Of a DNA stretch of 64,000 bases, positions 29,823-32,403 are shown one piece after another. The notes below the pieces were generated by a model. It had not been told where the DNA came from. It worked only from the letters and a program-made list of their open reading frames with translations, and did no database searches. The stretch comes from Selaginella moellendorffii. Its lineage: Eukaryota; Plantae; Lycopodiophyta. Location: assembly GCF_000143415.4 (NCBI RefSeq), contig NW_003314291.1, positions 699,270 through 763,269 of the forward strand, given 5' to 3'. Each line of letters begins with the position of its first letter. The stretch's first letter is position 1. A program made the position numbers and the translations under genes.

Positions 29823-30041
29823 TTAGGATCCAACTGGAGCATTTGCCGAGACGTCGGGCTTTTCGTAGCTGAAAACGACTTGATTGCCACGGGGACTGGG
29901 ACTGGAGGGAGGAACTTGGATGTTCTTGGGCAGCCGGTTAAACGTGACGAGGTTCTCGTGATCCATCGTCCCGGCCTGGTCCCTGGCAAAGATCGGCATC
30001 ACCATCAAGCACCAGAGCAACATCAAAACCCGAGGTACCAT
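29823..30041 (-). CDS. Small secreted peptide precursor, IDA/IDL-like
   Basis: 72 aa with a hydrophobic signal peptide. Motif FNRLPKNIQVPPSSPSPRGN (compare IDA FGYLPKGVPIPPSAPSKRHN), then a short tail. Confidence 0.75.
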   Translation of the reverse strand: MVPRVLMLLWCLMVMPIFARDQAGTMDHENLVTFNRLPKNIQVPPSSPSPRGNQVVFSYEKPDVSANAPVGS

Positions 30042-30828
30042 CCTGAGAAGAACTCTGACGCTCTTTTCTCTGGAGAGGGATGTTTTGTTTTTCTAGCAGC
30101 CGAGGTGGACGAAGGCAATGTGTTTGCCGCAATGGTTGAAATTACGCGATGGTGGTGAGTTTGTCAATTCTAGTTTGCTAAAATTCTTCTCTGGCGCTGT
30201 TGCTACGACCCGGCTTGGTTAGTGCTTTGTGCTCAATACTTTTCAGAGTCTTTGCGAGACAAGACAATGTGTTACACGCGTTGGCTCAGATCTACAAAGT
30301 TGTCAAATAGTTTTTTCTCTGGATCCTTTGCATTCTTTCTTCCAACTTTGAGAGTCTTCCTCCAAAGAAGTACCAAACCTTCTACTTCCAAAAACTCGTC
30401 TTCTTCGCTCGAGTAATAATAAGCTTTGTTTTCATACTGTTTTGGTGTTCGTAGTTGGAGTCATGGTTTTTGGCTGTTGATCGATGACTTTTAGCAAAAT
30501 CAGCGCGTAGTTTTTGACATTGTGATTGTCTTTGCTTTCTTTCCAAGGTTTGAAAGCGTTGGGATTCTACGTGATTTGTTGACTATTTGAATAAGTCATG
30601 CTCAAGATTCAGGTGTGGATGAGATAAGAGCAACAAACAAAAGTCCCGAGTTTCAAACACACAGTTTTATTTGTTTAAGAATTCGATGACACGACTATGT
30701 ACAGAAAGAATAGATCCAACCAAGTCTAAACACAAAAATAAAACTCTCCTTTGGTGTGTGTGTGTGTGTGTACGTGTTCTTCCCTCAGCAAAAATGCAAG
30801 ACTTTGGAGATTCTTGTCAAAGTATTTC

Positions 30829-31095
30829 TCAATTTCCTCCAGGATTTGGCCCCGAAGGAGGAGGATCATCGAAGAACTTGCTTCTCCCGTTCCATCCCGC
30901 ATGGAGCTCCCGCAGCGCTCTCGTGCATCGATCCAGCGCCCCCGATGCCGCCACGCGAATCGCTTCCAGGCTGTGATGATGCCGGTGGCGATCGTGGAGA
31001 TTCCTGGCCGAAGAACACACACAACTGGAAGAAACCAGGAGAAGAGCCAGCAACAAAGCCACTCCAACACGACGCGGTGGAGCCATGAAAACCAC
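30829..31095 (-). CDS. Small secreted peptide precursor, CLE-like (atypical)
   Basis: 88 aa. Signal peptide VGVALLLALLLVSSSCVCSSAR; C-terminal RSKFFDDPPPSGPNPGGN then stop. TATA-like site near 31180. Confidence 0.75.
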   Translation of the reverse strand: MVFMAPPRRVGVALLLALLLVSSSCVCSSARNLHDRHRHHHSLEAIRVAASGALDRCTRALRELHAGWNGRSKFFDDPPPSGPNPGGN

Positions 31096-32163
31096 TCTCG
31101 ATGATCGTGTCTAGATGATCTCTTCTTGACTCTCTCGAGCTTTTCCTCTCGATCGATCAATCGATGGACGACTTTGGTTTTATACCACGCCCCAGGATTC
31201 GCGAGAGAAGATCAAGCAAAGCAAAGAAAGCGCAAAGAAAGCGCTTACCACTCTACTGCGATGATAAGAATTTCCCCTTGGAAGACGAAAGAGTGCTAAC
31301 TTGGCTACCACGCCACCACCAATTAAAGGTGTTTGTTCATGTAACACGGTTTTGACCCTAGGCCAGCCAGCACATACCATTCGTCACCCTACTTTCACCC
31401 AGAGATAAGTTTTCTTGCGCTCTGGATCAAGCAACAACCAGCAATTTTACCACGAAACTCTTGCACCAAACTCTCTAGTTTAGAGTTTTACCCGGAGAAA
31501 ACTTCCACCCAAGAACAGCAAGGTCTCGAGTTTAGAAATTTCAACGGGTTGAAAAGGAAAAAAGGGTGCGAGGAAGTGCCACTTTTTGGTGTCCCAGATC
31601 GTGGGCTTCCCGCAAAATCATAGCCGGCATTTCGCGTAGCCGACCCATTTGACACAGTAAATTTTCTTAGTTAAGCGGTGAAGAGCTCGGCACGCCACCT
31701 TAAGCGGGTAAAGATTCGTCGTCAAAAATAGCCACGAGTTTTTCAACGCTTGAACTTGAAATTGTGCACGTTCAAAAGCACGAATATGGGAAAACCAGGA
31801 AAAAAAACGTTGAATGGTCAAGAGTCAGCTACTTTAGAAGCAGGAAAACAGGGCCAGTCAACCATTGTCATGCCGTAGGCGCGTTCACGAGTCGTTTCCA
31901 TGGCAGTTCCTGGGTGAAAAAACCAAAATATAAAGCTGGGCATGCTCTCGAGTGGATCAATCACGGGTTCTTCCAAGCATACGAATCGATATCATTTCCG
32001 ATCATTAGAGTCTTCAAGGAGGAAGAATACGATCTCAACGATTCCTTCTTCCTCAATTGGAGTACATATCACCGGTTTTGAAGATTTTGGCAACGCGATC
32101 ACAGTGCCAAGATCATCGTCTAGAGGGATCGGATCCGGAGAGATCGTTCTAGGCTCTTTGGGA

Positions 32164-32403
32164 ATGGCGAGATTTACTCGGGCGCTGGCTGCTTTCCTCG
32201 TGATGATGGTGATGTTCTCTCCGGGTCTTTGCGAGTGCCATGGTGGAGTGAGTGGATCTTTGTTCGGGATTGGAATGAATAACAGTGAAGTAGCGATCAA
32301 TTCGACGGGCAACAGGAAGATGTTGCTGGAAGGCCACGTTTTCCAAAAGCTTCCCAAGAATACTCCAACAGCACCATCGGGTCCAAGCAAGGATCACAAC
32401 TGA
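32164..32403 (+). CDS. Small secreted peptide precursor, IDA/IDL-like
   Basis: 79 aa from MARFTRALAAFLVMMVMF; C-terminal FQKLPKNTPTAPSGPSKDHN then stop. TATAAA near 31930. Confidence 0.82.
   Translation: MARFTRALAAFLVMMVMFSPGLCECHGGVSGSLFGIGMNNSEVAINSTGNRKMLLEGHVFQKLPKNTPTAPSGPSKDHN

What the first reader, a model, noticed from the sequence alone, without database searches (positions are those of the whole stretch)
29823..32403. Cluster of three single-motif peptide genes, each mirrored in the distant polyprotein
Seen: three short signal-peptide ORFs within 2.6 kb. 30829-31095 ends RSKFFDDPPPSGPNPGGN, matching RSKFVAPSGPNPGGN. 32164-32403 ends LPKNTPTAPSGPSKDHN, matching GPSKDHN (DNA ccaagcaaggatcacaac versus cccagcaaggatcacaat). 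29823-30041 has LPKNIQVPPSSPSPRGN, matching LPKGSTPGSSPSPGHN. Inference: the four genes form one locally evolved family related by fusion or fission. Such small ORFs are easily missed by annotation.
Basis: partly seen in the sequence, partly recalled or inferred. Interest (0 to 1): 0.8.

Follow-up and report, generated by a model that had tools for sequence, protein, structure and literature searches.

The report
Three small spikemoss peptide-hormone genes
A 2.6-kb stretch of the spikemoss Selaginella moellendorffii holds three unannotated small genes for secreted hormone-like peptides (two IDA-type, one CLE-like); two are clearly transcribed, so they extend known families, and their supposed local origin from a nearby multi-peptide gene is not shown.

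Summary
Observation confirmed. The three ORFs exist as described, and each has a signal-peptide-like N-terminus and a Pro/Ser/Gly motif ending in Asn. A profile built only from the four polyprotein units ranks them top 3 of about 1,580 six-frame pieces.

**Genome:** S. moellendorffii scaffold GL377595.1. None of the three ORFs is in the protein collection searched; the polyprotein is annotated.

**Transcription:**
- ORF2 (30829-31086, -) and ORF3 (32164-32403, +) each sit in their own small transcript island, with a TATA box and first AUG.
- ORF1 (29823-30041, -) lies antisense inside the spliced last exon of the neighbouring LRR gene's mRNA. It has no transcript evidence of its own.

**Identity:**
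- ORF3 and ORF1 carry IDA-type peptides (F..LPKN..P.S.PS...N).
- ORF2 carries a CLE-like "PSGPNPGGN" peptide. This type is otherwise seen as repeated units in fern, Ginkgo and spruce precursors, and spruce units are catalogued as CLE.

**"Mirroring":** real at the level of peptide class. Local fusion or fission is not demonstrated:
- there is no DNA similarity outside the motifs;
- synonymous sites within the shared motifs mostly differ;
- only ORF2 is closest to its polyprotein unit.

The scan had already reported the polyprotein (s1-402697).

**Verdict:** new members of known kinds, of moderate interest.

The parts
29823..30041 (-). ORF1: 72-aa IDA-like precursor candidate. Signal-peptide-like N-terminus MVPRVLMLLWCLMVMPIFA; predicted peptide region FNRLPKNIQVPPSSPSPRGN at 29883-29942; then a 19-aa tail. 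The ORF is intact but lies antisense inside the LRR mRNA's last exon.
30829..31086 (-). ORF2: 85-aa precursor from the first ATG (the tool lists a GTG at 31095). Signal peptide MAPPRRVGVALLLALLLVSSSCVCSSA; C-terminal CLE-like peptide ..RSKFFDDPPPSGPNPGGN (last 12 aa = 30832-30867).
30662..31168 (-). ORF2 transcript island (RNA-type contigs in 4 runs). TATAAAA at 31178-31184, AATAAA at 30666-30671, and a (CA)n repeat at 30744-30783 in the 3'UTR.
32164..32403 (+). ORF3: 79-aa IDA-family precursor. Signal peptide MARFTRALAAFLVMMVMFSPGLC; C-terminal EPIP-like FQKLPKNTPTAPSGPSKDHN (32341-32400).
31972..32504 (+). ORF3 transcript island (a 533-nt contig in run X2 and a fragment in X7). TATAAA at 31929-31934. 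The first ATG of the transcript is 32164; the in-frame ATG at 31942 lies upstream of the contig.
46111..46689 (+). Multi-unit precursor ('polyprotein'), annotated from 46117 as a hypothetical protein (allele SELMODRAFT_426056 / XP_002987163.2). Units: 2x APSGPNPGGN, NPGPSKDHN, SSPSPGHN.
28386..29675 (+). Neighbouring LRR-only secreted protein gene (LRRNT_2 plus LRRs, no kinase). Context only.
29703..29820 (+). GT..AG intron in the LRR mRNA's 3'UTR. The exon that follows (29821 to about 30434) covers ORF1 on the opposite strand. The intron has zero contig depth in all four runs.

Best explanation
The interval 29.8-32.4 kb of this Selaginella moellendorffii scaffold is a small cluster of genes for secreted, post-translationally modified peptide ligands. 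Each encodes a signal peptide, a fast-evolving pro-region and one conserved 12-20-residue peptide at or near the C-terminus. ORF3 is an expressed IDA/IDL-family gene (FQKLPKNTPTAPSGPSKDHN). ORF1 is a second IDA-like copy (FNRLPKNIQVPPSSPSPRGN) that is intact but has no transcript evidence of its own. ORF2 is an expressed CLE-like gene of the 'GGN' type (PPSGPNPGGN). By analogy with characterised IDA and CLE peptides, I infer the following, none of it shown here: the precursors enter the secretory pathway, are cut by subtilases, are Pro-hydroxylated, and the released peptides bind subfamily-XI LRR receptor kinases (HAE/HSL type for the IDA-like ones; TDR/PXY or BAM/CLV1 type, or an unknown one, for the GGN type). 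The polyprotein 14 kb away is a separate, ancient precursor type carrying the same peptide classes. The small genes are old paralogues kept by purifying selection on the peptide only, not recent local derivatives.
For: Shown here. The ORFs and motifs are present, and the polyprotein-only profile picks out the three ORFs. The N-termini are signal-peptide-like. ORF2 and ORF3 each lie in a discrete transcript island with no coverage between them. The runs are RNA-derived, because all four skip a GT..AG intron. Both genes have a TATA box and a first AUG in the transcript; an AATAAA signal lies just before the 3' end of the ORF2 island. Over the 21 motif residues that are identical between partners there are 14 synonymous and no non-synonymous codon differences. 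The flanks are unalignable. This is the pattern expected of peptide-ligand precursors. Allelic or strain variants in the transcripts keep both frames open and leave the last 20 aa untouched: ORF3 has three synonymous codon changes plus R6Q and H58Q, and ORF2 has one synonymous change. ORF3 matches GmIDA1a at 13/20 and AtIDA at 12/20 positions; ORF1 matches at 12/20 and 11/20. ORF1's peptide region aligns with unit 4 of Ginkgo Gb_15970 (17/34, pairwise E 2e-5). PSGPNPGGN units recur in Ginkgo, spruce-like and fern proteins. Spruce units HVAPSGPNPGGN and DVAPSGPNPGGN are listed as CLE Group 4 in the supplements of PMC7552357. IDA orthologues in S. moellendorffii were proposed earlier (PMC8462819).
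Against: No Pfam family matches, and the word searches found no homologue for ORF2 or ORF3, so family assignment rests on about 20 residues. ORF3 has KDHN instead of the family's [KR][KR]HN. ORF1 has SSPS..PRGN. ORF2 lacks the R/H at position 1 and the H at position 11 of canonical CLEs. ORF1 is antisense to the LRR mRNA's last exon; its 3' end would have to lie in 29703-29820, which has zero depth in all four runs, and no TATA box is seen upstream. The contigs carry no strand information. Processing, modification and receptors are inferred only.
Confidence: 0.72

Rival explanations
1. One reading: the three small genes and the polyprotein are one locally evolved family. Either the polyprotein was assembled by fusing copies of the three neighbours, or the neighbours arose by partial duplication (fission) of the polyprotein.
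For: The genes are linked within 17 kb, and each small gene has a same-class unit in the polyprotein. Pair-specific residues are shared: RSKF upstream of PSGPNPGGN, the unusual KDHN (D in place of the usual R/K), and SSPSP (S in place of G). With gaps allowed, ORF2's nearest relative is polyprotein unit 1 (13 identities, score 65). ORF3 has the most identities with unit 3 (14).
Against: No DNA similarity exists beyond the motifs, apart from one 55-nt match at E 0.002. Synonymous sites are largely different. The mixed multi-unit layout exists in Ginkgo, spruce and a fern, so it predates Selaginella. ORF1 is nearer to angiosperm IDA and to Ginkgo unit 4 than to polyprotein unit 4, and ORF3 scores highest with soybean IDA. 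An unlinked gene (Sm416983) has a GGN unit almost as close to ORF2. Shared residues could equally reflect co-evolution with the same receptors.
Confidence: 0.25
2. ORF1 is not a working gene. It is an unexpressed or decaying IDA-like copy that happens to remain open inside the 3'UTR exon of the LRR gene.
For: The only transcript over it is the + strand spliced LRR mRNA. The region where its own 3'UTR would lie has zero depth in four runs. No TATA box lies upstream, unlike ORF2 and ORF3. Its core departs most from the IDA consensus (SSPS, PRGN).
Against: The ORF is intact with a good signal peptide. Its peptide region is conserved with Ginkgo unit 4 and angiosperm IDA. The transcript allele in run X2 (and likewise X1) shows no difference across the ORF1 CDS within the 445 nt that X2 covers, against 5 differences in the adjacent 153 nt; the chance of that is about 0.03 if differences were spread evenly. 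Contigs drop rare transcripts, and peptide genes are often induced only in special tissues.
Confidence: 0.4
3. The ORFs are chance open frames with coincidental Pro/Ser/Gly-rich motifs.
For: The proteins are short and of low complexity. There is no Pfam hit and no homologue by word search.
Against: See for the statistics, for discrete transcripts, for synonymous-only divergence, and for cross-species matches.
Confidence: 0.03

Closest known systems
IDA/IDL peptide family (INFLORESCENCE DEFICIENT IN ABSCISSION; ligands of HAESA/HSL2). SmIDA1-3 were proposed for S. moellendorffii by Furumizu et al. 2021 (PMC8462819).
   Same: The precursors are small with a signal peptide. The C-terminal EPIP-like region follows F-x-x-L-P-K-x..P-x-x-P-S-G-P-S-K-x-H-N. 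ORF3 matches GmIDA1a at 13/20 and ORF1 at 12/20 positions. ORF1 has a variable tail after the motif, as IDLs do.
   Different: ORF3 has D where the family has R/K (KDHN). ORF1 has SSPS and PRGN (no His). Both have LPKN rather than LPKG. I could not establish whether either is one of the published SmIDA1-3, because those sequences appear only in figures. Receptor binding is untested.
CLE family, in particular the TDIF/H-type 'Group 4' of Zhang et al. 2020 (PMC7552357), which lists Picea abies HVAPSGPNPGGN and DVAPSGPNPGGN.
   Same: ORF2 has a signal peptide and a C-terminal 12-mer with the P-S-G-P-N-P core and a terminal Asn. Its last 9 residues are identical to the spruce units.
   Different: There is no R/H at position 1 and no His at position 11 (Gly-Gly-Asn end). 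ORF2 is single-unit, whereas the fern, Ginkgo and spruce proteins carry 1-12 units followed by PIP/CEP-like units. ORF2 is not in the published S. moellendorffii CLE list.
Mixed multi-unit precursor of this window (46111-46689) and its relatives: Ginkgo Gb_15970/15969/15962, spruce MA_10356943g0010 and Adiantum MCO5612106.1.
   Same: The same peptide classes are present. ORF2 shares RSKF..PSGPNPGGN with unit 1, ORF3 shares GPSKDHN with unit 3, and ORF1 resembles Ginkgo unit 4 (FNRFPKGSVPPSGPS).
   Different: The small genes carry one unit each. Their pro-regions are unalignable with the polyprotein and there is no DNA-level similarity.
PIP/PIPL peptides (SGPS core plus C-terminal GxGH).
   Same: ORF1's SPSPRG resembles the SGPSxxG part of the motif.
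   Different: None of the three ORFs has the defining C-terminal GxGH. That motif appears only in the Ginkgo and spruce polyproteins.
Root-knot nematode secreted peptide 16D10 (GKKPSGPNPGGNN), a CLE-like mimic.
   Same: It shares nine identical consecutive residues, PSGPNPGGN, with ORF2 and the polyprotein units.
   Different: It is an animal gene with no pro-region. The resemblance covers 9 residues only, and no relationship or shared receptor was tested.

Membership tests
IDA/IDL | Small prepropeptide (<~120 aa) with an N-terminal signal peptide | tested here: met
   ORF3 is 79 aa and ORF1 is 72 aa. Both have n/h/c regions, and their h-region hydropathy is in the top ~3% of window ORFs. SignalP was not available.
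IDA/IDL | C-terminal core S(G/A/V)PS (Vie et al. 2015, PMC4526919) | tested here: met
   ORF3 has SGPS. ORF1 has SSPS, which lies outside the stated set, so this feature is not met for ORF1.
IDA/IDL | Core followed by (R/K)(R/K)HN | tested here: inconclusive
   ORF3 has KDHN (3 of 4 positions, with an acidic residue in place of a basic one). ORF1 has PRGN (2 of 4, no His).
IDA/IDL | Extended EPIP region F-x-x-LPKG-x-P-x-P upstream of the core | tested here: met
   ORF3 has FQKLPKNTPTAP and ORF1 has FNRLPKNIQVPP, against AtIDA FGYLPKGVPIPP and GmIDA1a FNFLPKGVPIPP.
IDA/IDL | Peptide binds and activates HAESA/HSL receptors | not testable with these tools
   This needs binding or complementation assays.
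CLE | Signal peptide plus a C-terminal 12-13-aa motif with core P-[ST]-G-P-[ND]-P and terminal N/H | tested here: met
   ORF2 ends DPPPSGPNPGGN*.
CLE | Arg or His at motif position 1 and His at position 11 | tested here: not met
   ORF2 has D at position 1 and G at position 11. Compare the CLE41, CLV3 and MpCLE sequences.
CLE | Recognised by a published CLE classifier | tested here: inconclusive
   Spruce units with the same last 9 residues are listed as Group 4 CLE. ORF2 itself is not in that paper's S. moellendorffii list. The classifier was not run here.
PIP/PIPL | SGPS core and GxGH at the extreme C-terminus | tested here: not met
   None of ORF1-3 has GxGH.
GGN-unit mixed precursors (Selaginella polyprotein, Ginkgo, spruce, Adiantum) | One or more [AV][PTR]SGPNPGGN units followed by IDA/PIP-like units in one precursor | tested here: not met
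   ORF2 has one GGN unit and nothing after it. It scores 49 bits against the unit profile, but it is part of that profile.

The most novel reading that the evidence does not exclude
The locus preserves, side by side, single-unit and concatenated forms of CLE-like and IDA-like ligands that diverged from one ancestral precursor. The 'GGN' peptides (PSGPNPGGN) would then be a distinct ancient ligand class of non-flowering vascular plants, with their own receptor. This class would be the natural model for the root-knot nematode 16D10 peptide, whose plant counterpart and receptor are unknown.
Probability: 0.12. Interest if true: 0.75.

Novelty: new member of a known kind. Interest (0 to 1): 0.42.

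Why it matters
IDA and CLE ligands and their subfamily-XI receptors are central to plant development, and their origin is debated (common descent or convergence; PMC8462819). IDA/PIP genes were first thought absent from lycophytes (PMC4526919). This locus adds two unannotated IDA-type genes and one single-unit GGN-type CLE-like gene to the S. moellendorffii catalogue. It also shows how easily such genes escape annotation. Together with the nearby mixed precursor, it gives concrete peptide sequences for testing which lycophyte receptors read which motif. It does not by itself resolve how the families are related.

Tried and rejected
- **Pfam scan of all four precursors:** nothing relevant.
- **Exact look-up:** the three ORFs, including alternative starts, and three start variants of the LRR ORF are not in the collection.
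- **Word-based homologue search:** ORF3 had no candidates, and ORF2 had 23 candidates with none significant. ORF1 was not searched because the quota went to the polyprotein.
- **Big HMMER search with a 32-column GGN-unit profile (A1):** only 8 proteins at E <= 0.001, all from Selaginella, fern, Ginkgo or conifer-like sources. A control showed the profile gives a bare 13-residue unit only 14 bits, and Sm416983's units about -1 bit. Absence of single-unit relatives, angiosperm members or nematode hits therefore cannot be concluded.
- **BLASTN among the four loci with 400-bp flanks:** only one marginal motif match.
- **Synteny in a fern:** the Adiantum locus returned no DNA. The spruce-like contigs showed no IDA-like small ORF within ~10 kb, which is uninformative for a 20-Gb genome.
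- **Published SmIDA1-3 sequences:** not available as text in the paper, the preprint or the held supplements.
- **Bacterial promoter/terminator scan:** irrelevant for a plant.
- **Other haplotype's copy of the cluster:** it lies beyond the 10-kb flank of L006.
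Full report
**What is there.** The window is Selaginella moellendorffii, assembly GCA_000143415.2, scaffold GL377595.1; the other haplotype is GL377644.1.
- ORF1 is 29823-30041 (-), 72 aa, with ..FNRLPKNIQVPPSSPSPRGN followed by a 19-aa tail.
- ORF2 is 30829-31095 (-) as listed from a GTG. The first ATG is at 31086, giving 85 aa ending ..RSKFFDDPPPSGPNPGGN*.
- ORF3 is 32164-32403 (+), 79 aa, ending ..FQKLPKNTPTAPSGPSKDHN*.
- The 'distant polyprotein' is 46111-46689 (+), 192 aa. It has two ..APSGPNPGGN units, one ..NPGPSKDHN unit and one ..SSPSPGHN unit.

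**Is it more than chance?** Yes.
- A profile built only from the four polyprotein units ranks the three ORFs first to third among about 1,580 other stop-to-stop pieces of the window (E 9e-5, 9e-4, 0.011; next 0.57).
- A profile of all units finds no further member in the 64 kb.
- All four N-termini have h-regions in the top ~3% of ATG ORFs in the window.
- Protein-level local scores are 5-10 sd above shuffles, except ORF2 vs ORF3, which share only PSGP.

**Are they annotated?** The polyprotein is annotated: P0001, with alleles XP_002987163.2 and EFJ11739.1 (SELMODRAFT_426056). None of the three small ORFs is in the 15-billion-protein collection under any start I tried. The word searches with ORF3 and ORF2 returned nothing. 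Pfam has no match.

**Transcription.** The four runs laid are labelled only 'RNA?'. They are RNA-derived, because every one skips the same 118-nt GT..AG intron and leaves the intergenic stretches at zero depth.
- ORF2 sits in an island from 30662 to 31168.
- ORF3 sits in an island from 31972 to 32504 (a 533-nt contig in X2 and a fragment in X7). There is no coverage between the two islands.
- Both genes have a TATA box just upstream of the island (31178-31184 on the - strand; 31929-31934 on the + strand). The ORF's ATG is the first ATG of the transcript in each case. For ORF2, an AATAAA lies just before the contig end.
- The in-frame ATG at 31942, which gives a 153-aa ORF, lies upstream of the transcript.

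**ORF1 is different.** The intron is 29703-29820 (CAG|GT..CAG|C on the + strand). It joins the end of the upstream LRR gene (stop codon at 29673-29675) to an exon running from 29821 to about 30434. ORF1 therefore lies antisense inside the LRR mRNA's last (3'UTR) exon, and the coverage over it is explained by that mRNA. An ORF1 mRNA would need its 3'UTR in 29703-29820, where depth is zero in all four runs. No TATA box lies upstream. Contigs cannot show strand and drop rare forms, so this is absence of evidence, but ORF1 has no transcript support.

**Selection.** Over the residues that are identical between each small gene and its polyprotein partner, 14 of 21 codons differ and all differences are synonymous. 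The compared segments are PSGPNPGGN for ORF2 vs unit 1, GPSKDHN for ORF3 vs unit 3, and SSPSP for ORF1 vs unit 4. Outside the motifs nothing aligns; BLASTN with 400-bp flanks gives a single 55-nt motif match at E 0.002. This is the usual signature of peptide-ligand precursors: only the mature peptide is constrained. It also means the duplications are old.

The transcript contigs carry allelic or strain variants.
- ORF3 has three synonymous codon changes plus R6Q and H58Q. None falls in the last 20 aa, and the frame stays open.
- ORF2 has one synonymous change.
- In run X2 (and likewise X1), the ORF1 CDS has no change in about 225 nt, while the adjacent 153 nt have five. The chance of this is about 0.03 if changes were spread evenly over the 445 nt covered. 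This is a weak hint that ORF1 is still constrained.

**What they are.** I compared the peptides with published sequences obtained through the paper tools: AtIDA FGYLPKGVPIPPSAPSKRHN and GmIDA1a FNFLPKGVPIPPSGPSKRHN (PMC5972575), and the CLE, IDA and PIPL peptides of PMC8462819.
- ORF3 matches GmIDA1a at 13/20 and AtIDA at 12/20 positions. ORF1 matches at 12/20 and 11/20. Both have the EPIP-type F-x-x-LPK..P..PS.PS...N layout, so I file them as IDA-type.
- ORF3 departs from the family definition in Vie et al. (S(G/A/V)PS followed by (R/K)(R/K)HN) only by KDHN. ORF1 departs more (SSPS, PRGN).
- ORF1's peptide region also aligns with the fourth unit of Ginkgo Gb_15970 (ENSVNVFNRFPKGSVPPSGPSHKG; 17/34, pairwise E 2e-5).
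- ORF2 has the CLE core PSGPNP, but neither R/H at position 1 nor His at position 11.
- ORF2's exact ending, PSGPNPGGN, recurs as repeated units in Ginkgo (P0003, P0013), in spruce-like proteins (P0002, which is nearly MA_10356943g0010; P0004; P0007-P0011) and in the fern Adiantum nelumboides (P0012, MCO5612106.1).
- Zhang et al. 2020 list the spruce units as predicted CLE 'Group 4'. Their S. moellendorffii list does not include ORF2 or the polyprotein.
- Furumizu et al. 2021 proposed SmIDA1-3. Their sequences are only in figures, so I cannot say whether ORF1 or ORF3 are among them.
- Earlier notes of this scan place another IDA-like trio 254 kb beyond the window's end, on the same genome. I did not test that.

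**Fusion or fission?** The class-level mirroring is real, and there are pair-specific residues: RSKF upstream of the GGN unit, D in KDHN, and S in SSPSP. With gaps allowed:
- ORF2's nearest relative is polyprotein unit 1 (score 65, 13 identities). That is only just ahead of a GGN unit of the unlinked gene Sm416983 (61) and of Ginkgo and fern units (58).
- ORF3 scores highest with soybean IDA (69), against unit 3 (62; 14 identities).
- ORF1 is nearer to soybean IDA (67), Arabidopsis IDA (63) and Ginkgo unit 4 (62) than to unit 4 of the polyprotein (46).

The mixed layout (GGN units followed by IDA/PIP/CEP-like units) is shared by Ginkgo, spruce and a fern, so the polyprotein type is older than Selaginella. 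With saturated synonymous sites and no flank similarity, a recent local event is excluded. An ancient one can be neither shown nor excluded with 12-20 informative residues. Co-evolution of different ligands with the same lineage-specific receptors would also produce shared residues.

**Limits.**
- The big search profile cannot see bare single units (a 13-residue unit scores 14 bits). I therefore make no claim that single-unit GGN genes, or angiosperm members, are absent elsewhere.
- I could not fetch the other haplotype's copy of the cluster.
- The look-up of sequencing runs and read laying were each used once. The runs were chosen on the polyprotein, so depths are not comparable between genes.

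**Verdict.** ORF2 and ORF3 are real, expressed, unannotated peptide-ligand genes. ORF1 is an intact IDA-like copy of uncertain activity. All three are new members of known kinds. The polyprotein itself was already reported by this scan (s1-402697).

Noticed in passing
window 30832-30858 (-) and 46261-46287, 46354-46380 (+): The nine residues PSGPNPGGN are identical to the core of the root-knot nematode secreted peptide 16D10 (GKKPSGPNPGGNN; PMC5972575 Table 1). A 2021 review lists 16D10's plant receptor as unknown (PMC8618561). In the searched paper library, the string occurs only in nematode-related papers.
   Followed up: partly
window 29883-29903 (-): ORF1's ending ..SPSPRGN resembles the nematode IDA mimic MiIDL1 (..NSGPSRRGN..), which also has Gly-Asn instead of His-Asn.
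   Followed up: no
window 28386-30434 (+): A secreted LRR-only protein gene (429-aa ORF; best PDB sequence matches are the FLS2, GSO1 and MIK2 ectodomains; no kinase) lies next to the peptide genes. It has an intron in its 3'UTR (29703-29820). Its last exon overlaps ORF1 antisense, so the two may form a cis-antisense pair.
   Followed up: partly
window 30744-30783: A (CA)n/(TG)n microsatellite in the 3'UTR of ORF2 breaks the transcript contigs there.
   Followed up: no
window 46648-46686 (+): The polyprotein ends ..LLATAQIFSHN*. This may be a fifth, unrelated C-terminal His-Asn peptide; it does not match the unit profile.
   Followed up: no
L002:11120-11785 and L004:9038-9703: The spruce-like metagenome contigs carry a second paralogue 8 kb downstream of the first, with one degenerate GGN unit (NVAPSGSNPGGN) and three PIP/CEP-like ..GVGHKY units. 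Ginkgo has three paralogues with close gene numbers (Gb_15962, Gb_15969, Gb_15970), so tandem duplication of the mixed precursor seems common.
   Followed up: partly
P0012 (Adiantum nelumboides MCO5612106.1): This fern precursor has at least 12 ..VSGPNPGGN units followed by an LLPKG-containing tail. It is the largest array of this unit seen. Its DNA could not be fetched.
   Followed up: partly
window 31942-32163 (+): An in-frame upstream ATG would extend ORF3 to 153 aa without a signal peptide. It lies outside the transcript contig, so an automatic annotator could easily call the wrong protein.
   Followed up: yes
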